From positions 216,914-280,913 of the IMG/VR virus record IMGVR_UViG_3300022935_000005: a DNA stretch of 64,000 nt. One strand, written 5' to 3'. The notes under the pieces were generated by a model. That model made no database searches. It had not been told where the DNA came from and worked only from the letters and a program-made list of their open reading frames with translations. Position numbers and translations under genes: made by a program. Positions within the stretch are counted from its first letter, which is position 1. Each line of letters opens with the position of its first letter. Below are positions 40,889 to 55,919 of this stretch, piece after piece.

Positions 40889-41401
40889 ATGACTACCAGT
40901 CTGCTACTAGCGACTCTGTGTACGGTCTTTTCAGACCCAAGCTTCTACATGAGTAACACTCGCCAGAAACAGGTATGTGATATTATGCCAGAAGTGCTCA
41001 ATGAAGCTACGAAAAATAATCTCGATCCATTTCTCTTAATGGGACTGATAACTGTAGAGTCTAATTGGAAGACTACGGCAGTCAGTCACGCCGGCGCGTG
41101 CGGACTAACTCAAGTCATGCCGAAATATACTGGAGGCTCTGCTACATCGAGAGTCAAATATACCTGCAAACAGCTTCAAGTACCTCGAACGGGAGTCCGC
41201 GTGGGAGCTAAGGTACTAGCTTGGTGGATCTATAGATACGGAAAGGGAGATGTACAGACAGGACTGTGCGGATATTTCTCAGGGTTTAGATGTCGGCCAC
41301 CAACAAAAGCAGGTAAGAACTACAGCATGAAGGTGCTTAAATATCGTGATAAAATTAAGCGGTTATACGAGGCAAAGGCTTCGGGAGGAAACGGTGGTTA
41401 A
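40889..41401 (+). CDS. Lytic transglycosylase (SLT domain) with N-terminal anchor
   Basis: GLITVESNW...AVSHAGACGLTQVMP. Confidence 0.88.
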   Translation: MTTSLLLATLCTVFSDPSFYMSNTRQKQVCDIMPEVLNEATKNNLDPFLLMGLITVESNWKTTAVSHAGACGLTQVMPKYTGGSATSRVKYTCKQLQVPRTGVRVGAKVLAWWIYRYGKGDVQTGLCGYFSGFRCRPPTKAGKNYSMKVLKYRDKIKRLYEAKASGGNGG

Positions 41402-44171: not shown

Positions 44172-44246
44172 ATGTCTGTAAAGCCCGACCTGCAAGACTA
44201 TTATTGAAATGCCTTTCGGGCTTTGGTGTAAAAGGAGAAAAAACAC

Positions 44247-44726
44247 ATGACATCATTCGCAGATAAGATCAAGAACCTCAACGTCGCTACTGACACTTTC
44301 GTAACTCTCACCTACGAAGAGGGTGCTGACGTTTTCCACTTTAACGAGACAGAAATTGAGACAGCGCTATCAGAGACTAACGTCGTTGAAACTCTCTGTT
44401 CCCTTCTTCTAACAAAGGGGCTCGATGTCCGAGACTCGTGGCAGGGCGAAAGTATTATTCAGAATTTGCGTGATCAAGACCTGTTAGAGGATTATGAGCG
44501 GGGCTCATTTGATTTCGAGTCTTACCTTGTAGAGACGATCAAGGAAAACTTCTACGATGTAGAGCTTGTAGATTACTCTACTGAGAAATACGATCACAAG
44601 CGTGGGTTTACGACGCTGACTGCAACTGTCAAGGTTCCAGTTGAGAACTTTTTAGCAATTGACCCTGCATGTTCAGAGTGGACGGTTTCTGTAGAAACTG
44701 ACGCTGGTACTCTTACACTTTCTTGA
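44247..44726 (+). CDS. Hypothetical protein, paralog of the C-terminal part of 50151-50867
   Basis: EEGADVFHFN...YERGSFDFESY...STEKYDHKRGFTTLTA. Confidence 0.7.
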   Translation: MTSFADKIKNLNVATDTFVTLTYEEGADVFHFNETEIETALSETNVVETLCSLLLTKGLDVRDSWQGESIIQNLRDQDLLEDYERGSFDFESYLVETIKENFYDVELVDYSTEKYDHKRGFTTLTATVKVPVENFLAIDPACSEWTVSVETDAGTLTLS

Positions 44727-44739
44727 TTCATAAACAACT

Positions 44740-44783
44740 CACCCCTTGCCTTTACTATTCAAAAGAAGAAAGGCAAGGGGTGA
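44740..44783. terminator. Long perfect hairpin after 44726
   Basis: CACCCCTTGCCTTT...AAAGGCAAGGGGTG, 14-bp stem; no clear U-tail. Confidence 0.55.
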
Positions 44784-45263
44784 TGTCGTATGACCAATAC
44801 AGAGTTCCATAAAGAGATTAGAAAGATTATTAAAGCCGCGCTGGATGACTTCTCTGGAAACCAGTTAAATCTGGATTCAGACTCCTGCAAAGAGGCTGTC
44901 TCCTACCGAGTGGCGACTGACATCATAGAAAACTTCGAGTTCTTATACGAGGATAAAAAGAAAGGATAGGACGTGTCGCGAGCGATTCTAGATCTTATAC
45001 AGCAACGGTACAAGTCAAAAGTCAAGCGTGAGATGCAATTGATCGAAAACAGCTTAGGTGCCGAGCTAAGAGAAGTCCCGGTAAAATTTAGGTACCGTCC
45101 AGCAGGAAGCAAAGAGAGCCATGTTGTGGAAGGAACAGTTTCTAGGGCGACATGGGATATTCATAGCGATGATGTAACTCTTGTGATAGACTTCCTGTGC
45201 CCAGAAAGAAAGAGTCCTAATACAACAGTCAGAAAAATTTCAGAGCTTTATGAGTGAGGTGAA

Positions 45264-45581
45264 GTGGAAAAGTTAGTCCGTGATTTCATTCCAGCTGTTA
45301 TTCAAGAATCAGGTAACTCCTGTAAATGGCGGTATGTCGATAGCAAGACAGAGCATGTAAGCTTTCTAATAAAGAAGCTGACTGAAGAAGCGAAAGAGCT
45401 AACTGATGCGATCGCTTTTTCAGATGTGAAGCAGGAAGCGGGTGATCTGTACGAAGTGTTTCAAACCCTTCTCAACATTACAGGCGTCTCATTAGAAGAA
45501 GCGCAAGCTGCCGCTAAGAAAAAAGCGTTGAGGCGTGGCGGCTTCAAAGAAGGTATTATCCTAGAAATGAAAGAGCGATGA
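45264..45581 (+). CDS. MazG-like / PRA-PH-like NTP pyrophosphohydrolase
   Basis: KLVRD.IP, KKL.EEA.EL, EAGDLYEV, K...RGGF..GIIL. Confidence 0.8.
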   Translation: MEKLVRDFIPAVIQESGNSCKWRYVDSKTEHVSFLIKKLTEEAKELTDAIAFSDVKQEAGDLYEVFQTLLNITGVSLEEAQAAAKKKALRRGGFKEGIILEMKER

Positions 45582-45872
45582 CCGCGTCGCTGGTGTTGTT
45601 GTTGGCCAGCTTACCTGCCGTTGAATGCCCTCGCTGGTTACCAGGAACAGATCAGGTTCTTCCTCCGCAAGTCCACCTGACGCCAGACCAACAGTTATCT
45701 AATAACCTTCGATGCTATTGCGAATTCGTAAAGCCCGCCGAGAGGGAGTGCGCACGAAATAATCCTCTAGACCAGTGTAAGCAGCGGACTCTAGAATGGA
45801 TAAATCGAAACCTTAGATTGAATACTTCTGGCAATGTTCCCGGCGTCCCACGACGGCTAAGGATGATATCTG

Positions 45873-46238
45873 TTGAGCCGTAAAGGGTTTGCGCTAGTGA
45901 CCGTATTATTTCTAGCGGCAGTGATTGTGTCTGGTGCATATCTAGTTTGGTCGATGGTGAACACAGATCAACAGATTGTACTCAACACCCGCAAAATATC
46001 TTTAGCAAGGGCAGCAGCGCAATCAGGCCTCAACCATTTTGTTGCTCTCGGCCTGTCTGACTCTGACGTGTCTGATCGGTTCGTGATACCAGAGACTAGC
46101 CTATCAAATAACACTACCTATGAAGTCATCGCGACTTGGATCGATCAACAAACACTCTTGGTAGTCAGCACGGGAAAATACAAAAAGAATGGTATGACTT
46201 TATTCTCATATCCCATGAGAGCAGTCTTTGGAAGATAG
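45873..46238 (+). CDS. PilX-like (minor pilin/pseudopilin K-type N-terminus) protein
   Basis: RKG-FALVTVLFL prepilin-like site; ...ARAAAQSGL. Confidence 0.7.
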   Translation: MSRKGFALVTVLFLAAVIVSGAYLVWSMVNTDQQIVLNTRKISLARAAAQSGLNHFVALGLSDSDVSDRFVIPETSLSNNTTYEVIATWIDQQTLLVVSTGKYKKNGMTLFSYPMRAVFGR

Positions 46239-46830
46239 TTTGTAATCTGCTACTATTTCTTTTATATTTTATATTATAGGGCAAATCACTAAGGAGGCCA
46301 CATGAGACACGATACGATTGTTGAAATTACTCCCGACGGCAGACCAGCTTTGCGGCTGGTAATCGTTCCAGACAGCTACTCTAGACCTCCAGAGAATGAC
46401 CACCCAGAACCAGAAAGTGTAGTAATCATTTCCTACGAAGAAGATGACCCTTACGTCGTGAAGGAAAATACCGTCACTTGGGAAGTCTAATGAAGCCCGG
46501 CGACTTAGTGAGGTTTCACCAGTGGGGTGATTTAGCTGATGTTAACGACTGGTCAACTACCCCGAAGTCTAAAGTCGGTGTTCTGATAGAGCACAATAAG
46601 CTCTTCGGTCACGTCGACATCTTGTATGAAGGTAATGTCATAAGAGAGCGCTCTGCTTTCGTAGAAAAAGCTGGAAAACGAGATTTAGCCAGAGAAGAAG
46701 ATGAATTGCCAAACTGAGCCTTTTTGTAGTTTCTGCGGTGAAGAGATGCCCCAGGGCTCACGTACGTTGGGCCAGATTTTTTGTAACTTGCTTTGTCAGC
46801 TTAAAGCTGATCCTATAGAACCGGTGACGC

Positions 46831-47076
46831 ATGAAGAAAGAAAAGGTAGACCACCCTTCCCACTACAACAAGGGGAAGATAGAAGTAATTGACGCTATCG
46901 AAGATTGGGATCTCAATTTCTCTGAAGGCAACGTCATAAAGTATGTCGCAAGACATCGTTTCAAAGGCGAACCGCTTGAAGACCTAAGGAAAGCAGAGTG
47001 GTATATTCAGCGCCTTATTAGAAATTTAGAAAAAAAACGTGAACAAGAGTTGTCAAATCGCTATACTCAATTATGA
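46831..47076 (+). CDS. DUF3310 / nucleotide-kinase-like phage protein
   Basis: VDHPSHY..G.IEVIDAI, FSEGNVIKY..R...KG..EDL.KA.WY. Confidence 0.85.
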   Translation: MKKEKVDHPSHYNKGKIEVIDAIEDWDLNFSEGNVIKYVARHRFKGEPLEDLRKAEWYIQRLIRNLEKKREQELSNRYTQL

Positions 47077-47489
47077 AGAGAGGAATAGCATTTTTGATAG
47101 TAGCGCTGTGTGCAGGCGCCGAAGTTGCACATGCAGATGTGATAAACACTGTAGACGATAATTGGAATAAGCATTGTAAGAAATGCCATGGCGTCGACGG
47201 AGAAGCGACAAAGATTGGGCTAAAGCTCAAGGCTCCCCCCGACTTATTCTCGGCTGTTGGGGCAAAATCAAGAGATGTCATAACTGACTATATTGAAAAC
47301 GGCAAAAACAAAATGCCGAAATATAGAAAGAAGCTCTCAACCGAAGAAATAGCAGCGCTGGTAGAGTTTGTTGAGTACGCGTCTCTTACGAAGAGAATGC
47401 GTGAAAATGAAGACAGGATAGATTCGACTCTGGAGCAGATTAAAAAAGATTATAAAAATTTGCCCGAGTGTGACTCTGTTACTCAATAA
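47073..47489 (+). CDS. Class I c-type cytochrome (c6/c553-like)
   Basis: Signal peptide, CKKCH haem site, GKNKMP axial Met, LSTEEIAALVEFV. Confidence 0.88.
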   Translation: MKRGIAFLIVALCAGAEVAHADVINTVDDNWNKHCKKCHGVDGEATKIGLKLKAPPDLFSAVGAKSRDVITDYIENGKNKMPKYRKKLSTEEIAALVEFVEYASLTKRMRENEDRIDSTLEQIKKDYKNLPECDSVTQ

Positions 47490-47498
47490 GGGGGACTC

Positions 47499-48209
47499 AT
47501 GAATAAATTGTCTATGATCGTAGGCGGTTTGGTACTACTGTTTTCTTCTCTTGCTAACGGTGCTGAAAAACTAGAGTATCAAATAAAAGTTCTCAACGTC
47601 GACTTTGGAGATGCTACACTATACACTTCTGAGGAACGCTTGTATGGTGAGATGAAGACTAATGATAAGTGGGGTAGCTTATACGCTGTTGATAACAAGA
47701 TGGCAACGTGGTTATCTCCTGAGGATTCACCGAAGAAGACAGAAATAGTATATAGAAAGCCCAGCAGAGTCATTAAATTTGAGCTCTTTTTTACCGCTGT
47801 GAACAATGTAAAAGTGAAGCTTTCAAGGCCTCATAAAAATCCCAAGTCCTATGTGACAAAGTCAAAGAGTGAAGTCTATGACTTTCTTACAATGCTCGCG
47901 ATTATGAGAAAAAAAGTGGGAGCCGATGAGACTGTTTTCTCAGTGATCACAGGTAAGAAGATTTATGACGTCGTGTTTACAAAGCAGAAGGATCAGAGTA
48001 TTACGACTTTATTGGGGCCCAAGGAAGCGGCGGTATATGATATCGTTGTGACGAGACCTGGAAAATTCCGACAAGAAATGAGAGTTTGGTTTGAGAAGAA
48101 TCCCGAGGCAACCCCCTTGAAGTTGGCTGGTAAAACCAAGCTCGGCGCTTTTGATGTGTCGATCCTAAAGCGCTCCCTCAACACGAATCAAGAAAGTTAT
48201 CAAAAATGA
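47499..48209 (+). CDS. Secreted DUF3108-like protein
   Basis: Signal peptide; L.YQI...DFGDA; RVWF...P..L. Confidence 0.6.
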   Translation: MNKLSMIVGGLVLLFSSLANGAEKLEYQIKVLNVDFGDATLYTSEERLYGEMKTNDKWGSLYAVDNKMATWLSPEDSPKKTEIVYRKPSRVIKFELFFTAVNNVKVKLSRPHKNPKSYVTKSKSEVYDFLTMLAIMRKKVGADETVFSVITGKKIYDVVFTKQKDQSITTLLGPKEAAVYDIVVTRPGKFRQEMRVWFEKNPEATPLKLAGKTKLGAFDVSILKRSLNTNQESYQK

Positions 48210-48496
48210 AGATTACGCTTACAAAGGATGAAGTTGAAAAACTTATAAGGACGCTCGACTGGGTCAACTTTGCAACTCAAGATACTGAGGAGTCAAGAGA
48301 GCAAATTAAGACCATAATCGCAAAGCTAGCGGTTGGACTAAAGAATGCGAGACAAACAACAGAGCTGAAGATTGATATTGTAGATGTCTAGTGAATAATT
48401 AAACACAGTTCCCGGAACCCCTAAGTTTGTAATCGGGTGGAGGGCAGACATCAACACGGCTTGAGCTTAACAGCTTGCCGTTATAAAGGACAGACG

Positions 48497-49843
48497 ATGA
48501 GGTTCATTTTTCTTAGTGTTATTGCACTTAGTTCTCTTACGTTCCCCGCATATTCACAGGATATCAGCGACAGTGAGACGTCATATTCTGGAGCTACAAT
48601 ATTAGAGGGAGACACCGACGTCTTCTTTTTTGATTTTGAGCCTATCAATGATCCGGACGGAGAAACAGATCCCTACGCATTTTTTGAGGGTAACACTCTG
48701 TATGCGGGAAATTCAGACCAGTACGGAAATACAGTAGATGCTATCATCGAATTCTTCTGGTTCGAATCCTCAATTGATCGTGGTTCTGATTTCTATGTTG
48801 CCGTTATCAAGACGAGAGTCACTCCTGGCGATGATTGCCAATGGGCTCCGTTTTCGTGGGCGGATGGAGTCAAGTGTAGGTTATGGACAGACCAGTGGCA
48901 GGACTGGGGGGAACATCCGGTGATGTCGGTCGAAGCCCATACTGATATATCCCTTGAACAAGGTGCGTTCAGGTGGGACTGGTCCATCCCTTTTGAAACG
49001 TATGGTATCGATGCTTATGGGCAAGTCACACTTAAGAATGAGTATGGGTTGGGTATTGAGTCTGAAGGCGCCGCAGTCGCCCACGGTGAATATCAGCTTG
49101 ACGAAGAGGGTAATGTAGAAGCAGAGGGTGAAGTACAAATCAAAGGGTTCGCTAATGAAGAGTACAGTGTTAAGACCCAGTACAACATTACGCTCTGGGA
49201 GTGGGAGATCTTTGTTGATGGACGAGCTGATCTGATGGCTTGGGACATGTACCTAAACCTTTCTGCTCGAGATGAACAGTCGGCTTACCATGAGTATTTC
49301 CTCAGCATTCAAGTTGCAGAAGGAGAGATGTTTACACTCAACGAAATCAAGATTCTTTCAAATTTCGATACGGGATGGTACAACCCAATTCACCATGAAG
49401 TGGGTTTAAGCATCGGACCCATCATGATAAATCGACCCTTCTACGAAATCGTAACGCCTGAAGAGCCAGAGGAAGAGCCAGAGCAGAACCCAGGAAAGAG
49501 ATACGAATTTCCCGTCTTGCCAGTTCCAGATGAGCAATCTGAGCCTGATCAGGTCGACATTGACGCTCCTTCGATGATGTCTGAAACACGAGGAGAGAGC
49601 GATCCCGTAGCCTCTGAGGCTTCAAAGGAAGCTCAAGAGACGCAGCAGGATGAGTTTAGCGGGCTTAGAGATATGTCATGGGATTATTTTGATGGGGGCC
49701 AGAGCGTAGAGTCTCCAGAAGCGCCGCCGCCCACTGAAACTATATACTCTAATGGATCTGGCTGCACCACCGCTAGTTCTGCTCCTTCACTTTTCATGTT
49801 CCTATTCATGATTCTGCCTCTAGTTGCCCGAAGCAAACATTAA
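48497..49843 (+). CDS. Secreted acidic protein with MYXO-CTERM-like C-terminus
   Basis: Signal peptide; E/P-rich stalk; GSGCTTASS plus TM segment plus ARSKH. Confidence 0.65.
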   Translation: MRFIFLSVIALSSLTFPAYSQDISDSETSYSGATILEGDTDVFFFDFEPINDPDGETDPYAFFEGNTLYAGNSDQYGNTVDAIIEFFWFESSIDRGSDFYVAVIKTRVTPGDDCQWAPFSWADGVKCRLWTDQWQDWGEHPVMSVEAHTDISLEQGAFRWDWSIPFETYGIDAYGQVTLKNEYGLGIESEGAAVAHGEYQLDEEGNVEAEGEVQIKGFANEEYSVKTQYNITLWEWEIFVDGRADLMAWDMYLNLSARDEQSAYHEYFLSIQVAEGEMFTLNEIKILSNFDTGWYNPIHHEVGLSIGPIMINRPFYEIVTPEEPEEEPEQNPGKRYEFPVLPVPDEQSEPDQVDIDAPSMMSETRGESDPVASEASKEAQETQQDEFSGLRDMSWDYFDGGQSVESPEAPPPTETIYSNGSGCTTASSAPSLFMFLFMILPLVARSKH

Positions 49844-50150
49844 TCTGTAAACTCTCATTCCCGCCTCTATAATAAAACAGCAACTATAAAACGATTCCGT
49901 AAATACAGAAAGTGAACTGATTGAAAGGTCATGTAATGGCTTGGACAAAAGAAACGCTGCTCGACAGCTTTTATCGCAAGAAGGGCAAAGCGCTGAAACA
50001 AGAAAAGAGCTTGCTAAAAATTAGAATGAACAGGGGGGACATCACACACGCTGAATACCTTGAGATCTTAGAAGAAACTAAAGAATACTATGCACAGTGG
50101 AAAGACCACAAAGAACCAAAGACACGTCAACGACGACAAGGGTTAAGATA

Positions 50151-50867
50151 ATGAGTACAGATTTCGCAGCAAGAATGGCAAAGATCAAAGCAGCAGAACC
50201 TTTTAAGGTTGGTGCAAAAGTAACACATAACGGAGATATCGGCACAGATGCGGAAGGTACTGTGTACGAGATATCAGTTCAGCAAGGGGTAGGTGCGCGC
50301 ATCTGGCTGGATCCGTATCGAAGCGGCACTCCATGTAGTTTTGAGGAGCTAGCTCTAGTCTCGACTGCAGTTAGTCGACGAGAGAAACTGAACAATACCT
50401 TCGACAAAACAGAGGTATCGGGTGATACCCGAGTCGAACTCTTCATGGAGGATGGCGCGGATGTTATTCACTACAACGACACTCAAGACGAAACCGTAAT
50501 GGAGGAGACAACTGTGATCGAGAGCTTGGTGGAGGCATCTCGTTCCGGTATTAAGTTTGAAGAAGACCTGATTCAGACACTTCGGGACTGGGACATGCTG
50601 GAAGACTACGAGCGCGGTTCGTACGAATTTGACAGCTACTGTTTAGAAAAGATTAAGGAGAATGCATATGACTTCTGCGACTTTATCGATTTCAGCACAG
50701 AACAGTACGATCACAAACGAGGTTATACAACTTTGACAGCACGTCTTTATACTACAGTAGATAACTTGAGGTCGGCTAACGAAGGACAAGTCAATGCGTT
50801 GTCAGGTTGGTCAGCAAAGTTTGAGTCGAAGGCTGTCGGTAACAGCACGATCACGATTGAAATTTAA
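50151..50867 (+). CDS. Hypothetical protein: KVGAKV barrel fused to a 44247-type domain
   Basis: EDGADVIHYN...YERGSYEFDSY...STEQYDHKRGYTTLTA. Confidence 0.7.
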   Translation: MSTDFAARMAKIKAAEPFKVGAKVTHNGDIGTDAEGTVYEISVQQGVGARIWLDPYRSGTPCSFEELALVSTAVSRREKLNNTFDKTEVSGDTRVELFMEDGADVIHYNDTQDETVMEETTVIESLVEASRSGIKFEEDLIQTLRDWDMLEDYERGSYEFDSYCLEKIKENAYDFCDFIDFSTEQYDHKRGYTTLTARLYTTVDNLRSANEGQVNALSGWSAKFESKAVGNSTITIEI

Positions 50868-50884
50868 TTTAACAAAAATTACAC

Positions 50885-50917
50885 AATCGTGCAAACGACT
50901 CCCTGGCGTGGTACTAT
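50885..50917 (+). promoter_or_regulatory. Repeated promoter copy
   Basis: AATCGTGCAA-N17-TACTAT. Confidence 0.7.
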
Positions 50918-51161
50918 AAAAATATAAAGGATAGCAACCACAAGGAAGGAGGTCAAAGATGACCAAGAAGATCAAAGTTGGAGATAGAGTTTACTACAGA
51001 GCTCCCCGGTTGGCAGATCGTAAGAAGGGCTCAAAGCCAGAATTCACAGTGGTAGAACTTTACGACGGTGGTACGATGGCTAATGTCAAACATGACGACG
51101 GTTATATCTTCACTGGCTACATCGTAGACCGAATGACTAAATACGAAGGATAGGTGTCAGT

Positions 51162-51755
51162 ATGAAAAACTATCTATTGCTCACTTCTATTATTCTTGCT
51201 GCATGCGGAGAAAACCCTGATATTACAGTTAGCGAAGAATCTTTGATTGAAGATCATGATGTAGCAACTCAGAATCTTCCTTATGTAGATTTTCTTCTTG
51301 ATATAGGGAACCTTAAAGCGAACGGAGATTTTCATTTCATGAATTCTTCTCTTAAAACCAGCGAAGACATTCATACGATATACGCTCAAGTCGGAGCGTT
51401 CATGGTGGATGTTGGGGATCATAATCCCGAACTGCTTCGAGTGCACTTTCGGAGTGACTATGAAGAGTGGGTAAGCTTTGATGACATCCTTTCTCCTGTT
51501 CATGCCACACAAGAAGAATGTGAAGAAAGTTCTTCTTACTGCGAAAGGGTTGACATCGTCCACGGCGAGAGCGGTTTGGTGGATTCTCAAGAGGGTCTGG
51601 TAGGCCTCAAGAATGTATACTGTCGTCACCTTGAAGAATCATATGAGTATGAGGTAGAAGCATGGGTAACAACCTTAGAGACTTACCCACCAACGATTGT
51701 AAGTGAAATAGAAGTTCTGACAGTTCAGTGCGAAAATGTAGATAGAGGAGAGTAA
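51162..51755 (+). CDS. Acidic lipoprotein
   Basis: MKNYLLLTSIILAAC lipobox. Confidence 0.65.
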   Translation: MKNYLLLTSIILAACGENPDITVSEESLIEDHDVATQNLPYVDFLLDIGNLKANGDFHFMNSSLKTSEDIHTIYAQVGAFMVDVGDHNPELLRVHFRSDYEEWVSFDDILSPVHATQEECEESSSYCERVDIVHGESGLVDSQEGLVGLKNVYCRHLEESYEYEVEAWVTTLETYPPTIVSEIEVLTVQCENVDRGE

Positions 51756-52331
51756 GATGAGTTTAAATTATAAAGAGTTCGGTATTGCTAGTGTTGTAAC
51801 TGTAGCTTACTTGTTGGTAGTTTTTGGTAGTTTGTTTGCCCAATAAAGGAGAAGCTTGAAAGTTGGAGAATTAGTCAATGTTCGGGTTCGCCTTGGTTGT
51901 GTTGATCCTCCTGTCTTCCAGGAACGTGGGATTGGATTAGTACTGGATATTAAGCGGACTGTGCCTCTCACTCTAAAGGGAGAAACTTTCTGTTTAGGAA
52001 ACGACATCGTGGTTTGTCTTGACGGTCGGGTTGAGAAATTCCACGAAAGTGATGTGCAAGAGGTACCTCACTAACTTGAGAGAAGGAAAGTTATGAAAAA
52101 ACTATGGTTTCTTAGCGTTACCGCGATCATCTCAACCTCGGCGATCTTCTTTCTTTTGAAAGAAAATATCGAGATCAAAGAAGGCTTGGGCAGTTGCATA
52201 GAGAACGTACAGAAGCAGTGCGGACCAATAATAAACTACGGAGTAGCTTTAGAGAATGAAAACGCGCGGCTGAACAGAAAGCTAGCCGCCTGTATCTGTC
52301 CAGAAAAGCTGGACTGAAAGATTCGGGGGAG

Positions 52332-54440
52332 ATGACCAACAGAAGACTAGCAGCTTCATTTTTCTTTCTTGCTGCTATCGGGTGCTCAGAAGATCAAGTC
52401 TCTCAGATGACCGTCGACTCTGGTGTAAGGACTATCACTCAAGATGACAGCAGTGCTGCAGATGTAATGATAGTCACAGTTCAAGACGCCTCTATAGATA
52501 TGTTCATTGATCCATGTCTCGACATCCAGAACACCGATGATATGTACTGTGAGTGTCACCCCAGATGCTGTCAAAATCAAACATGGTACTGCCCTCCTAG
52601 AGGTACTGAAGTTTTGGCAAAAGATGCTGTCTTAGACATCTGCGATACTGACTATGTACCGTGTGATAGAAACATTGATGAATCATGTCCTCCGGCAGAA
52701 ATTATCTACGAAAGTTCTTGTAACCATATGTTTGACTGTCCACCGGGCATAGACGAAGACTTTACAGTTTTCTATGATTGTGAGGTGGATGGTAACCCGG
52801 GCACTCAGAGGGTGCGTTGTGACAAGGGAAGGTTAGACTATGGACAGTGCGTCGTTTGTGTCTTGGCGGACGAGATCTGTGACGGCCAAGATAATGACTG
52901 CGATGGCGAAATAGACGAACACCAATTGAATGAATGTGGTCAATGTGGATTGTTACCCCAAGATGCTTGTGATGGGCTCGATAACGACTGCGATGGTCTT
53001 GTTGATGAAGATCTGGTTCAAGCATGTGTCACTACATGTGAGCGTGGTGTAGAGGTTTGTGAAAACGGAGCCTGGGTGGGTTGTACAGCAAGACAGCCAT
53101 CCGAAGAAATCTGCGACGGCTTCGATAATGACTGCGACGGTTTGATTGATGAAGAGCTTAATTGCGGATGCCCACCTGAGATGGTCGGCGCGTTGCTACC
53201 CTGTATGGAACCACCACTAACTTGTGGGATGGGATTCAAGACGTGCGAGTGTGAAGATGAAGACTGCTTGACAACTCGAATGTCTGACTGCTTCGCTTTG
53301 TGCGCTTGGTTACCGGCAGAGATAGTCCAGCATGATGAGCCAGACACTTGTGACAGATACGCAGGAATGCCTGTTAATCCAGAAGTTTGTAATAACTTCG
53401 ACGAAGACTGTGACGGTTTAATCGATGAGAGACTAAACAAGCCTTGCTATTCTGGTCCTCAAGATACTATAGGGGTAGGTGTGTGTCGAGGTGGTAGTCA
53501 AGTCTGCGAACAAGGTCGCTGGTACGGAGAAACAACAGCCGGCAGTTTTGTTCACGATTTTTGTGCAGGTGAGATCGTACCCAGCAGAGAGATTTGCGAC
53601 GGTAGTGATAATGACTGCGATGGTGTTACCGACTTTGGTCGAGAGATTCCAGACACAGACATTCTTTTCATTCTTGATTGGTCTGGATCTATGGCATACC
53701 AGATCAACGCTGTAAAGATGGCGATGAATAGATTTGCAAACCATTTCGCTGCAGAGGGTAAGTTAAAATGGGGATTAATAACCGGACCTCGGATTTTTCC
53801 AAGAGAAGGTCAAGATCCTTCACAGGCTAAACAATACCTGAGGTTAGAAACTGACATAACATCATTCTCAGATTTTATCGCTGCATTCTCTGCAGCTGGT
53901 GCTTTTGAGACTGGAGCAACCCATGAAATGTTAATTGACGCGCTGCTGCTTTCTGTCGCGACTATTTCATCTAACATGACTTATGACCTGTCAACCGCAC
54001 AGTGGTTCAATGGTTTCTCTGACGCCGGATCGATTCCGAGTCTACAAGACTTTCGAATAAACTGGCGACATAACGCTGACAGGGTTATCGTAGTGTTTAC
54101 AGACGAGGAGGATCAGTCTTTCCTCGTACCGAAAGTGACTAGCGAACAAGCTATAGCAGCCCTCGAGGGATCACCAGATACTACACTTTATGTGTTCACA
54201 CAAAGATACTTTTTTTCGAGGTGGGACGATTATGTAGACCCGACAGGTGGAAGACTGTTCCCATTATCTTCTAACTCTGAGCAGATGTATGATGATCTCA
54301 TGTCTATACTCGATGAGATCTGCCTTAACGCAGGCTCTTCTGTACAGATGGAAGAAGCTTCGTATAATGGTAATATGTCAAGCCAGCTATACAATCCAGT
54401 GATTTCAAGATATAATTTTTCTGGTGGCTATTGCTACTAA
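52332..54440 (+). CDS. Cys-rich lipoprotein with repeated E.CDG.DNDCDG..DE (putative metal-binding/MopE-like) motifs and C-terminal VWA domain
   Basis: Lipobox AAIGC; five CD/NxxDxDCDG units; DILFILDWSGSM, VIVVFTDEEDQS. Confidence 0.85.
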   Translation: MTNRRLAASFFFLAAIGCSEDQVSQMTVDSGVRTITQDDSSAADVMIVTVQDASIDMFIDPCLDIQNTDDMYCECHPRCCQNQTWYCPPRGTEVLAKDAVLDICDTDYVPCDRNIDESCPPAEIIYESSCNHMFDCPPGIDEDFTVFYDCEVDGNPGTQRVRCDKGRLDYGQCVVCVLADEICDGQDNDCDGEIDEHQLNECGQCGLLPQDACDGLDNDCDGLVDEDLVQACVTTCERGVEVCENGAWVGCTARQPSEEICDGFDNDCDGLIDEELNCGCPPEMVGALLPCMEPPLTCGMGFKTCECEDEDCLTTRMSDCFALCAWLPAEIVQHDEPDTCDRYAGMPVNPEVCNNFDEDCDGLIDERLNKPCYSGPQDTIGVGVCRGGSQVCEQGRWYGETTAGSFVHDFCAGEIVPSREICDGSDNDCDGVTDFGREIPDTDILFILDWSGSMAYQINAVKMAMNRFANHFAAEGKLKWGLITGPRIFPREGQDPSQAKQYLRLETDITSFSDFIAAFSAAGAFETGATHEMLIDALLLSVATISSNMTYDLSTAQWFNGFSDAGSIPSLQDFRINWRHNADRVIVVFTDEEDQSFLVPKVTSEQAIAALEGSPDTTLYVFTQRYFFSRWDDYVDPTGGRLFPLSSNSEQMYDDLMSILDEICLNAGSSVQMEEASYNGNMSSQLYNPVISRYNFSGGYCY

Positions 54441-54450
54441 TGGGGAAGCC

Positions 54451-54837
54451 ATGAGCTTTAATCTAAGAGAAACTAAGATATTTGTTGCGCTCGCTTCAGT
54501 ATTTATGTTATGCTACGCGGCTTTACTTATAAAGGGCGCCAACAGGTTCGAGGCTCATTCTGCGACGTCACAATCTGCTGCTGAGGTTGAGTATGCAAGG
54601 ACAGCGGCCCAAGAAGGAATGAGCGAGTTTATCTCTATCCACCTCTCCAATGAACCAATAGAAAGCGGTGTTTTGATTCCAGAAACGCAGTTGAGACATG
54701 GCTCGTCTTATGAAGTAGAAATCCAGCATAATGAGGCTGGTAACATCGTTGTCACGAGTAGAGGGAAATACAAGAGTTCGAATGATATAATCTATGAGTA
54801 TCCTATACGGGCAGTCCTCAGCCCCAAAAGTGACTAA
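54451..54837 (+). CDS. Second PilX-like protein
   Basis: TM segment, then ARTAAQEG; YEV, V.SRGKYK and YP.RAV shared with 45873. Confidence 0.6.
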   Translation: MSFNLRETKIFVALASVFMLCYAALLIKGANRFEAHSATSQSAAEVEYARTAAQEGMSEFISIHLSNEPIESGVLIPETQLRHGSSYEVEIQHNEAGNIVVTSRGKYKSSNDIIYEYPIRAVLSPKSD

Positions 54838-55517: not shown

Positions 55518-55919
55518 ATGGCTCGCCGAAAGAAAAAAAAGTCGAAGCTCTGGAAGTCGATAAAGAAGGTCAACTACACTCGAGTTAGCGATGGGAAAGT
55601 TATCCAGATGGATAGCAGTTGGGAAGTTAAGTGTGCTGAAAAACTAGACGAGCTGAATGTCGAGTGGGAACGAACCGAAGACATAAAGCTACAATACATT
55701 GATAAGAAAGCGCAGACTAGAAACTACATCCCTGACTTTTACCTCCCAGAGTATGACATTTATTTAGAAGTGAAAGGATACTGGACGACACCAGCCAGAT
55801 GGAAAATGAGATCCGTTATGGATAGGAATCCTGGGAAAATTCGTCTGCTCCAGAGTCTAGATGAAATATCAGAGTTAGAGCTTCCCGTTCTGGCAACGAC
55901 CAGTAGCGTTCCGCTATGA
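55518..55919 (+). CDS. PD-(D/E)xK endonuclease (TnsA-N / T7 endonuclease I-like)
   Basis: DSSWE, YIPDFYL...IYLEVKGYW. Confidence 0.8.
   Translation: MARRKKKKSKLWKSIKKVNYTRVSDGKVIQMDSSWEVKCAEKLDELNVEWERTEDIKLQYIDKKAQTRNYIPDFYLPEYDIYLEVKGYWTTPARWKMRSVMDRNPGKIRLLQSLDEISELELPVLATTSSVPL

What the first reader, a model, noticed from the sequence alone, without database searches (positions are those of the whole stretch)
45873..54837. Two isolated PilX-like minor-pilin mimics
Seen: 45873 has a G-FALV prepilin-type site and ARAAAQSG; 54451 is a paralog (ARTAAQEG, YEV, GKYK, YP.RAV). Both are only 120-130 aa and have no other pil genes nearby. Established: PilX/GspK-type minor pilins prime type IV pilus assembly, and pili are common phage receptors and drive myxobacterial S-motility. 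Inference: dominant-negative pilus blockers for superinfection exclusion or motility control.
Basis: partly seen in the sequence, partly recalled or inferred. Interest (0 to 1): 0.6.

Follow-up and report, generated by a model that had tools for sequence, protein, structure and literature searches.

The report
Phage-encoded minimal PilX-type pilins
An uncultured 281-kb salt-marsh jumbo phage carries two small genes that really are stripped-down relatives of the bacterial pilus-tip subunit PilX/GspK. One comes with a conserved secreted partner protein and the other has lost its processing site, so the phage probably tampers with its host's pili or secretion pseudopili, though this is untested.

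Summary
Both ORFs are real, under purifying selection, and paralogous (32% identity, E 4e-21). They belong to a family seen only in phage-type contigs. It gave 43 hits in 1.84 billion proteins, and four viral Atlas clusters of 64-117 members share the fold.

Neither window protein hits Pfam PilX_N directly. However, 16 of 36 family members do, three above the curated cut-off. The AlphaFold model (pLDDT 93) is a pilin "lollipop". Its six best solved neighbours are all tip minor (pseudo)pilins: ComZ, PilA2, S. sanguinis PilA, EpsI, GspI and XcpV.

Its TTG start lies inside the last codons of a 101-aa secreted four-cysteine protein, and that partner sits directly upstream in all 9 testable Gly(-1) lineages.

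Gene 2 belongs to a derived clade that lost both the Gly(-1) prepilin-peptidase site and the partner. In this lineage only, it follows a MopE+VWA lipoprotein gene.

The phage has no prepilin peptidase and no other pilus gene, so any pilin function depends on host machinery.

The function is inferred, not shown: remodelling or blocking the tip of the host's type IV filament, for example superinfection exclusion as with prophage P-FimU. The host is unknown, and a myxobacterial host is unsupported.

The parts
45578..45883 (+). Partner gene: a 101-aa secreted protein. It has an N-terminal signal-like hydrophobic stretch, an invariant C-P-x-W motif, 4 invariant Cys, a helical hairpin (residues 36-78) and a low-confidence C-terminal tail with a conserved alternating pattern (RRLRMISVEP). 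Its last codons contain the TTG start of the pilin-like gene.
   Evidence: An HMM of the partner finds it immediately upstream of the pilin-like gene in L006, L011/12, L018/19, L022, L023/24, L020/21, L083 and L084/85. Alignment A3. AF2 model at pLDDT 71 with tail below 50. No Pfam family. dN/dS 0.17.
45873..46238 (+). P0001: a 121-aa minimal PilX/GspK-type (Glu5-less) prepilin-like protein. Leader MSRKG, predicted cleavage G|F, hydrophobic alpha1-N, then alpha1-C carrying the A..AAQSG..HF motif and a 4-stranded sheet.
54451..54837 (+). P0002: a 128-aa diverged paralog with the same globular domain. Its N-terminus is a plain signal-anchor with no Gly(-1), so it is predicted not to be processed by a prepilin peptidase. 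It has no partner gene.
   Evidence: It falls in a single clade (support 99/97) with P0008, P0014 and P0017, sister to Gly-bearing, partner-linked P0009 and P0013.
52332..54440 (+). A 702-aa predicted lipoprotein with MopE-type Cys-rich repeats and a C-terminal VWA domain, lying directly upstream of P0002. The association is lineage-specific only, so membership in the module is doubtful.
   Evidence: Pfam MopE E 2e-17, VWA weak. The VWA fold sits in all-viral Atlas clusters. It lies upstream of P0002-type genes in L013, L014 and L016. In 15 other viral loci with a 44-64% identical VWA domain, no pilin-like gene lies within 3 kb.

Best explanation
P0001 is a phage-encoded, miniaturised tip-class minor pilin of the PilX/PilK/GspK type: a short basic leader, Gly(-1), no Glu5, and a PilX_N-type alpha1 helix. 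It is made together with a small secreted disulfide-bonded partner from an overlapping, probably translationally coupled gene pair.

Inferred mechanism: after infection the host's own prepilin peptidase cleaves P0001. The phage encodes no such peptidase. Because P0001 lacks Glu5, it can only sit at the apex of a type IV filament. It therefore enters the initiation (tip) complex of the host's type IV pilus or T2SS pseudopilus, or competes for it. The partner either rides on it or stabilises it. The result is a remodelled or blocked filament tip. The most likely benefit is exclusion of pilus-dependent competitor or sibling phages from an already infected cell.

P0002 is a derived copy that kept the globular domain but lost the cleavage site and the partner. 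It should stay anchored in the inner membrane, and it may act as a non-assembling decoy.

Shown here: paralogy, family, fold, motifs, gene linkage, selection, and absence of other pilus genes. Inferred: processing, incorporation, target filament and biological benefit.
For: - Paralogy: E 4e-21.
- Family: 43 hits, and every context inspected is phage-like.
- PilX_N profile hits in 16 of 36 members, 3 above the gathering score, each covering essentially the whole 51-position model.
- Sub-threshold NCBIfam hits for the two window proteins are both to pseudopilins: GspK and XpsH.
- 22/22 Gly-type N-termini carry [KR]-G-[FYMV], and 0/26 have Glu5.
- AF2 model at pLDDT 93: helix 3-59 plus 4 strands.
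- The top six of 48,161 PDB representatives are all tip minor (pseudo)pilins, Z 7.3-8.4, rmsd 2.0-2.8 over 77-81 residues.
- Atlas shape search: viral clusters at TM 0.84-0.90 over all 121 residues, one of them PilX_N-annotated, followed by bacterial N_methyl and T2SSI (GspI) clusters.
- The partner is immediately upstream in 9 of 9 testable Gly-bearing lineages, with a conserved overlap of its stop region and the pilin TTG start.
- No peptidase A24, N_methyl or PilX_N elsewhere in the phage.
- dN/dS 0.07-0.17.
- Precedents: prophage P-FimU minor pilins and PilA-like genes in virulent phages (PMC12952977). Glu5-less subunits sit at the tip (PMC9934059).
Against: - Neither window protein reaches any Pfam or NCBIfam threshold by itself.
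- Foldseek against the PDB gave nothing at E <= 0.001. VIA Z of about 8 is, by the tool's own note, a typical best score for an unmatched model, so the fold argument rests on the consistency of the top hits, not on the score.
- No bacterial homolog sits in a pil or gsp operon to anchor the family.
- The host and its filaments are unknown.
- Expression is not shown. One metatranscriptome holds the region at 100% identity, but uniformly, which may be DNA carry-over.
- No processing or incorporation data exist.
- P-FimU works without blocking pili, so the direction of the effect is open.
Confidence: 0.55

Rival explanations
1. The partner acts as a mini-PilY1. Its disordered C-terminal tail is donated in trans as the last beta-strand of the P0001 sheet, as PilC/PilY1 does for PilK/PilX. 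The phage thus supplies a complete two-protein 'licensing' cap that seeds or caps host filaments with a phage-specified tip.
For: - Strict gene linkage and overlap in 9 of 9 lineages.
- The partner tail is conserved as an alternating hydrophobic/polar pattern, and it is the only part of the mature protein modelled below pLDDT 50.
Against: - The P0001 model already has a closed 4-stranded sheet on its own.
- There is no positive modelling or biochemical evidence of binding.
- The partner has no beta-propeller or adhesin domain.
Confidence: 0.2
2. The pair is a lysis or envelope module unrelated to pili, for example a spanin-like pair. A bitopic inner-membrane protein would work with a small secreted or outer-membrane partner to disrupt or bridge the envelope at lysis.
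For: - The general layout fits: a small N-terminally anchored protein next to a small Cys- and Pro-containing secreted protein, with overlapping genes.
- An SLT lytic transglycosylase lies about 4.5 kb upstream (window 40889-41401), and in L020 one lies about 2 kb upstream.
Against: - The partner has no lipobox: residue -1 to the invariant Cys is E or V.
- The gene order is the reverse of Rz/Rz1.
- The periplasmic domain of P0001 is a beta-sheet pilin head, not a coiled coil.
- PilX_N hits, Gly(-1) conservation and pilin structural neighbours are unexplained by this view.
Confidence: 0.07
3. The proteins are pilin-derived but no longer act on filaments. The pilin fold would be reused as a membrane-anchored periplasmic binding module, for example to tether the partner or, for P0002, the VWA lipoprotein, or to sense or block another envelope target.
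For: - P0002-type proteins lost Gly(-1) yet keep the globular domain under purifying selection.
- The region is rich in phage-encoded envelope proteins: cytochrome c, DUF3108, lipoproteins and MopE-VWA.
Against: - Strict retention of the [KR]-G-[FYMV] site and of the PilX_N-type alpha1 in all other lineages argues that processing and assembly features still matter.
- The VWA-P0002 adjacency is not conserved outside close relatives.
Confidence: 0.15

Closest known systems
PilX / PilK / GspK class of tip minor (pseudo)pilins (Pfam PF14341 PilX_N; T2SS GspK)
   Same: - Short basic leader ending in Gly, hydrophobic alpha1-N and no Glu5.
- The PilX_N profile matches family members over the whole 51-position model.
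- The pilin-like domain of ComZ, described by its authors as closest to GspK, is the top structural neighbour.
   Different: - About 120 aa with no inserted alpha or beta-solenoid domain.
- No sequence similarity beyond alpha1.
- Encoded by a phage with no I/J/H partners, no PilY1 and no machinery.
- The window proteins themselves are below every curated threshold: GspK NCBIfam 12.3 bits against 130.
GspI / EpsI / XcpV, Thermus PilA2 and S. sanguinis PilA (the 'I' subunit of the tip complex)
   Same: Size (about 120 aa) and a bare lollipop fold. Z 7.3-8.1, rmsd 2.3-2.8 over 77-81 residues. A T2SSI cluster matches at TM 0.68 in the Atlas.
   Different: No sequence match to T2SSI or N_methyl. 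Most GspI proteins carry the canonical N-methyl/Glu5 motif, which this family lacks.
Prophage P-FimU, and phage PilA-like proteins (Sztanko et al., Cell Rep 2026, PMC12952977)
   Same: A phage-encoded type IV pilus subunit with no other pilus genes in the phage. It relies on host machinery and has a proposed or shown role in excluding pilus-dependent phages. PilA-like genes also occur in virulent phages.
   Different: - P-FimU is a close copy of the host's FimU (H class, with Glu5) in temperate Pseudomonas phages.
- Here the protein is a K/I-class Glu5-less mini-pilin with no detectable bacterial ortholog, in uncultured marine jumbo myoviruses.
- It always comes with a dedicated secreted partner, plus an uncleavable derivative.
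PilC/PilY1 - PilK beta-strand addition module (Ellison et al., PNAS 2026, PMC13533445)
   Same: A two-gene unit in which one protein is a PilK-class pilin and the neighbour ends in a short conserved strand-like tail.
   Different: The partner is 85 aa mature, a helical hairpin with two likely disulfides. It has no propeller or VWA domain, and binding is not shown.

Membership tests
Type IV pilin superfamily (class III signal peptide proteins) | Short positively charged leader ending in Gly(-1), followed by about 20 hydrophobic residues | tested here: met
   P0001 has MSRKG|FALVTVLFLAAVIVSGAYLVW. All 22 Gly-type family members with complete called N-termini have [KR]-G-[FYMV], and so do P0009 and P0013 after start correction. 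For P0002 the feature is NOT met: no Gly at the aligned position in 4 of 4 subfamily representatives.
Type IV pilin superfamily (class III signal peptide proteins) | Cleavage and N-methylation by a prepilin peptidase (PilD/GspO) | not testable with these tools
   No Peptidase_A24 in the phage. This needs co-expression and mass analysis.
Type IV pilin superfamily (class III signal peptide proteins) | Lollipop fold: a long N-terminal helix packed on an antiparallel sheet | tested here: met
   AF2 at pLDDT 93 with helix 3-59 and strands 69-76, 81-89, 94-105 and 108-120. Pilins fill the top of the VIA list, and Atlas N_methyl and T2SSI clusters match at TM 0.68-0.74. This is a prediction, not an experimental structure.
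Type IV pilin superfamily (class III signal peptide proteins) | Glu at position +5 (canonical assembling pilins; absent in the K class) | tested here: not met
   0 of 26 complete N-termini have Glu at +5; P0001 has Thr. This is consistent with the PilX/GspK class, not with major pilins, FimU or GspH.
Pfam PF14341 PilX_N | Score at or above the gathering threshold (25.5 bits) | tested here: inconclusive
   P0001 and P0002 give no reported hit even at E <= 10. The six-frame search of the phage gives none either. Relatives alignable over their full length do pass: P0016 (45% identical to P0001) at 26.6 bits, P0030 at 27.7 and P0046 at 34.4. P0011 and P0015 score 22-23 bits. In all, 16 of 36 hit at E <= 1.
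T2SS GspK (NCBIfam NF037980) | Full-length ~300-aa protein with an inserted alpha-domain, scoring at or above 130 bits | tested here: not met
   12.3 bits, N-terminal 53 residues only. hhalign against E. coli GspK aligns only the leader and TM segment. XcpX scores Z 5.6.
T2SS GspI (Pfam T2SSI) / N_methyl | N_methyl motif and T2SSI profile match | tested here: not met
   No N_methyl or T2SSI hit in any of 36 members or in the genome. The similarity is structural only.
Two-component spanins (Rz/Rz1) | The outer-membrane partner is a lipoprotein (lipobox before Cys), and the inner-membrane partner has a coiled-coil periplasmic domain | tested here: not met
   Residue -1 to the invariant Cys is E or V, so there is no lipobox. 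The P0001 head is a beta-sheet.
Trimeric autotransporter YadA-type anchor | C-terminal helix plus 4 strands after a Sec signal and a passenger domain, ending in an aromatic beta-signal | tested here: not met
   Hia and AtaA anchors appear at Z 6.4-6.6. But the protein has no passenger, its helix begins with a TM-like prepilin segment, and the C-termini of the family are variable and do not end on the aromatic residue.

The most novel reading that the evidence does not exclude
Large marine phages carry a self-contained two-protein 'tip cap': a Glu5-less mini-pilin plus a secreted strand-donor partner. The cap would plug into the host's type IV filament initiation complex in place of PilK/PilX-PilY1, letting the phage seed, cap or retarget host pili or pseudopili. 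An uncleavable paralog would act as a membrane decoy. This would be the first viral mimic of the filament-licensing step itself.
Probability: 0.2. Interest if true: 0.75.

Novelty: new variant of a known kind. Interest (0 to 1): 0.55.

Why it matters
Phage-encoded pilus subunits have only just been shown to act as anti-phage defence (P-FimU). Those were near-copies of a host gene in temperate Pseudomonas phages.

Here a sequence-divergent, phage-restricted family of the apex (K/I) class turns up in uncultured marine jumbo phages. It is always coupled to a dedicated secreted partner. If it acts on the tip-initiation step, it would give three things:
- a minimal, 120-residue probe of how type IV filaments are licensed;
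- a new class of phage-versus-phage or phage-versus-host interference;
- a marker (a pilus- or T2SS-bearing host) for phages whose host is unknown.

Tried and rejected
**Direct family and database searches**
- Direct Pfam, PHROG and NCBIfam scans of both proteins gave nothing significant.
- PDB sequence-profile searches with A1 and A2 gave only chance hits.
- Foldseek against the PDB and BFVD gave nothing at E <= 0.001.
- hhalign of the family profile against single E. coli GspK, GspI, GspG and YgdB sequences aligned only the leader and TM segment, or nothing for YgdB. It does not discriminate between pilin classes.

**Partner binding**
- Complex prediction of P0001 (28-121) with the partner (17-101) returned no verdict (score 0.02). 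This counts neither for nor against binding.
- An Atlas feature search with the partner gave no usable hit.

**Wider distribution**
- The search for related loci with family alignments failed for lack of a conserved 7-10-column stretch.
- A degenerate DNA pattern for the A-A-Q-S-G-x-N-H-F motif over 185,579 species genomes gave 32 hits. None encodes a family member or a partner.
- tBLASTn of P0001 and of the VWA protein against 50,697 cultured-phage records gave no match.
- DnaE and the tail sheath find only remote relatives, so no host could be inferred.

**Other ideas tested**
- The idea that the MopE-VWA lipoprotein is the functional partner of P0002 (a split TadG/CpaL-like arrangement) is weakened. 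15 other viral loci with the same VWA domain have no pilin-like gene within 3 kb.
- The promoter and terminator scan was at chance level.
- Three giant repetitive proteins in the profile search (P0023, P0045, P0048) were set aside. P0023, once read, is a repetitive adhesin and a spurious repeat hit; the other two were judged only by length and multiple short matches.
- RNA evidence is inconclusive. Contigs of one metatranscriptome cover 44200-50100 at 100% identity, but evenly, and two other RNA runs leave the gene pair uncovered.


Full report
**Setting**

The window is bases 216914-280913 of a 280,913-bp IMG/VR virus record, CheckV completeness 92%. It encodes a tail sheath and a DnaE-type polymerase. 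It has no close cultured relative. It recurs at full identity in 14 salt-marsh DNA runs, most or all of them possibly the source samples, and at slightly lower identity in one estuary and one seawater metagenome. Almost all genes lie on the + strand, and there is no tRNA in the window. It is an uncultured jumbo myovirus of unknown host.

**Observation**

- ORF 45873-46238 (P0001, 121 aa) starts at a TTG nine bases after an AAGGA. It reads M-S-R-K-G-F-A-L-V-T, followed by a hydrophobic stretch.
- BLASTP gives 32% identity over 115 residues, E 4e-21.
- Only these two copies exist in the phage.
- dN/dS against orthologs is 0.07 for P0001 and 0.15 for P0002, so both are constrained genes.

**Family**

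The word-based search found only near-identical metagenomic copies and one 72% ortholog. JGI had named that ortholog 'PulK'.

A profile search of 1.84 billion representatives returned 43 hits. Nearly all were proteins of 88-182 aa (most 105-151). The rest were three giant repetitive proteins, which I set aside: P0023, once read, is a spurious repeat hit.

Every genomic context I could read is phage-like. The contigs show runs of small co-oriented ORFs with thymidine kinase, ThyX, GIY-YIG, HSP20, MazG/PRA-PH, SLT and Clp protease.

A degenerate-motif scan of one genome for each of 185,579 prokaryotic species found no family member. The ESM Atlas shape search finds four all- or mostly-viral clusters (64, 117, 70 and 71 members) with TM 0.71-0.90, so the family is sizeable among phages.

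**Is it PilX-like?**

Taken directly, no. Neither window protein hits PF14341, even at E <= 10. The best NCBIfam hits are sub-threshold, though both are to pseudopilins: GspK at E 0.09 and XpsH at E 0.086.

At family level, yes:
- 16 of 36 members hit PilX_N. Three are above the 25.5-bit gathering score, each covering essentially the whole 51-position model. One of these is P0016, which is 45% identical to P0001 over its full length.
- All 22 Gly-type members with a complete called N-terminus carry a basic leader ending in Gly, followed by F, Y, M or V. P0009 and P0013 do as well once their mis-called starts are corrected.
- None of the 26 complete N-termini has Glu at +5, the hallmark that separates the K class from assembling pilins.
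- AlphaFold2 with the 36-sequence alignment gives pLDDT 93. The model has one helix (3-59) and a four-stranded antiparallel sheet.

Foldseek is silent on the model. The exhaustive VIA search ranks ComZ (Z 8.4), Thermus PilA2/TT_C0855 (8.1), S. sanguinis PilA (8.1), EpsI (7.6), GspI (7.5) and XcpV (7.3) first. XcpX (GspK), FimA, PAK pilin and PilE come lower.

The authors of the ComZ structure describe its pilin-like domain as closest to GspK, and PilA2 as closest to GspI (PMC6561018). S. sanguinis PilA is a GspI-like, Glu5-less subunit proposed to enter the tip first (PMC9934059).

A Z of about 8 is not remarkable on its own. What carries weight is that the top six hits all belong to one functional class, and that this agrees with the sequence evidence.

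I conclude that P0001 is a bona fide, highly reduced tip-class minor pilin homolog. It has the sequence signature of the K class and the size and shape of the I class.

The ORF just upstream (45578-45883, 101 aa) overlaps P0001 by 11 nt. The pilin TTG lies inside the codons for the partner's last residues.

An HMM built from five partner sequences finds a partner immediately upstream of the pilin-like gene in every locus that has upstream DNA: L006, L011/12, L018/19, L022, L023/24, L020/21, L083 and L084/85. In L022 gene callers had missed it. In L023/24 it overlaps an over-extended pilin call. These loci span pilin identities down to about 30%.

With the window's own lineage, that makes 9 of 9 testable Gly-bearing lineages. 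In the two sister lineages the same overlap of partner stop and TTG start is kept.

The partner has these features:
- a signal-like N-terminus;
- four invariant Cys and an invariant Trp;
- a predicted helical hairpin;
- a C-terminal tail of low confidence with a conserved alternating pattern;
- no Pfam family;
- no lipobox, which argues against an o-spanin.

**The second paralog**

P0002, P0008, P0014 and P0017 form one clade (support 99/97), sister to P0009 and P0013. After start correction, P0009 and P0013 have both Gly(-1) and the partner.

The P0002 clade has neither. Its N-terminal half has drifted, while the globular half keeps the family motifs.

It always follows a MopE-repeat/VWA lipoprotein gene. 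That adjacency is confined to close relatives: 15 other viral loci with the same VWA domain lack any pilin-like gene nearby. I therefore treat P0002 as a derived, probably uncleavable, membrane-anchored copy. The VWA link is unproven.

**Mechanism**

The phage lacks a prepilin peptidase and every other filament gene. Any pilin function must therefore use host machinery.

Established knowledge:
- Glu5-less K-class subunits occupy the apex of the tip complex that initiates type IV pili and T2SS pseudopili.
- PilC/PilY1 licenses assembly by donating its last ~10 residues as a strand to the PilK sheet (PMC13533445).
- Prophage FimU copies are built into pili and block tip-binding phages, and virulent phages carry PilA-like genes (PMC12952977).

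Inference: P0001 is processed by the host and enters the initiation complex, or competes for it, with its partner bound. This changes or blocks the filament tip, most plausibly to exclude pilus-dependent phages from an infected cell.

Whether the partner donates a strand is an attractive but unsupported idea. The single complex job gave no verdict, and the P0001 sheet is already closed in the monomer model.

**Expression**

One metatranscriptome yields contigs covering 44200-50100 at 100% identity. One of them is a 1,815-nt contig running from within the partner gene through P0001 into the downstream genes. But coverage is even, and two other RNA runs leave the pair uncovered, so transcription is not shown.

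**Verdict**

The PilX-like identity is supported at family and fold level. The functional reading is plausible by precedent but untested.

I rate this a new variant of a known kind, namely phage-encoded pilus subunits. Interest is moderate to good.

Noticed in passing
window 48437-49843: A 468-aa secreted, acidic protein ends in G-C followed by a hydrophobic stretch and basic residues (…GCTTASSAPSLFMFLFMILPLVARSKH). This is reminiscent of a C-terminal sorting signal of the MYXO-CTERM/PEP-CTERM kind. No Pfam or NCBIfam model matched. It is conserved at 81% in the related phage.
   Followed up: partly
window 47073-48209: Two adjacent phage genes encode secreted proteins: a cbb3-type cytochrome c domain protein (138 aa, E 1.8e-13) and a DUF3108 protein (236 aa, E 2.5e-11). 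Both are conserved in the related phage. They look like unusual envelope or redox auxiliary genes.
   Followed up: no
window 52332-54440: The 702-aa MopE-repeat plus VWA lipoprotein belongs to several ESM Atlas clusters that are 100% viral (50-83 members). MopE-VWA proteins therefore appear to be a widespread, undescribed class of phage envelope proteins. Orthologs share a conserved C-terminal Y-N-F…C-Y tail.
   Followed up: partly
window 44247-44726 and 50097-50867: The 159-aa protein and the C-terminal part of the 256-aa protein are paralogs. The first matches the ortholog of the second at 46% identity. No family was found for either.
   Followed up: no
protein P0043, not in the window: One family representative starts with the partner's C-P-K-W-V-P-G-T motif and continues directly into the pilin-like alpha1-C and head. 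This is either a natural fusion or deletion of the two genes, or a frameshifted assembly.
   Followed up: no
window 45264-45581: A MazG/PRA-PH-like pyrophosphohydrolase gene lies directly upstream of the partner here, in L006 and in L084/L085. A MazG-partner-pilin order is thus kept in part of the family.
   Followed up: partly
loci L083 (104-514), L084 (2010-2378), L022 (4690-5001), L023 (2985-3332): Public gene calls for this family are often wrong. TTG starts are missed, which truncates the prepilin leader. The partner is uncalled in L022, and the pilin start is over-extended through the partner in L023. This hides both the Gly(-1) site and the gene pair from automated annotation.
   Followed up: yes
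window 55518-55919: A 133-aa protein gives weak phage endonuclease I / DUF790 hits (E about 1e-5, below the cut-off). It is conserved two to three genes downstream of P0002-type genes in L013 and L016.
   Followed up: no
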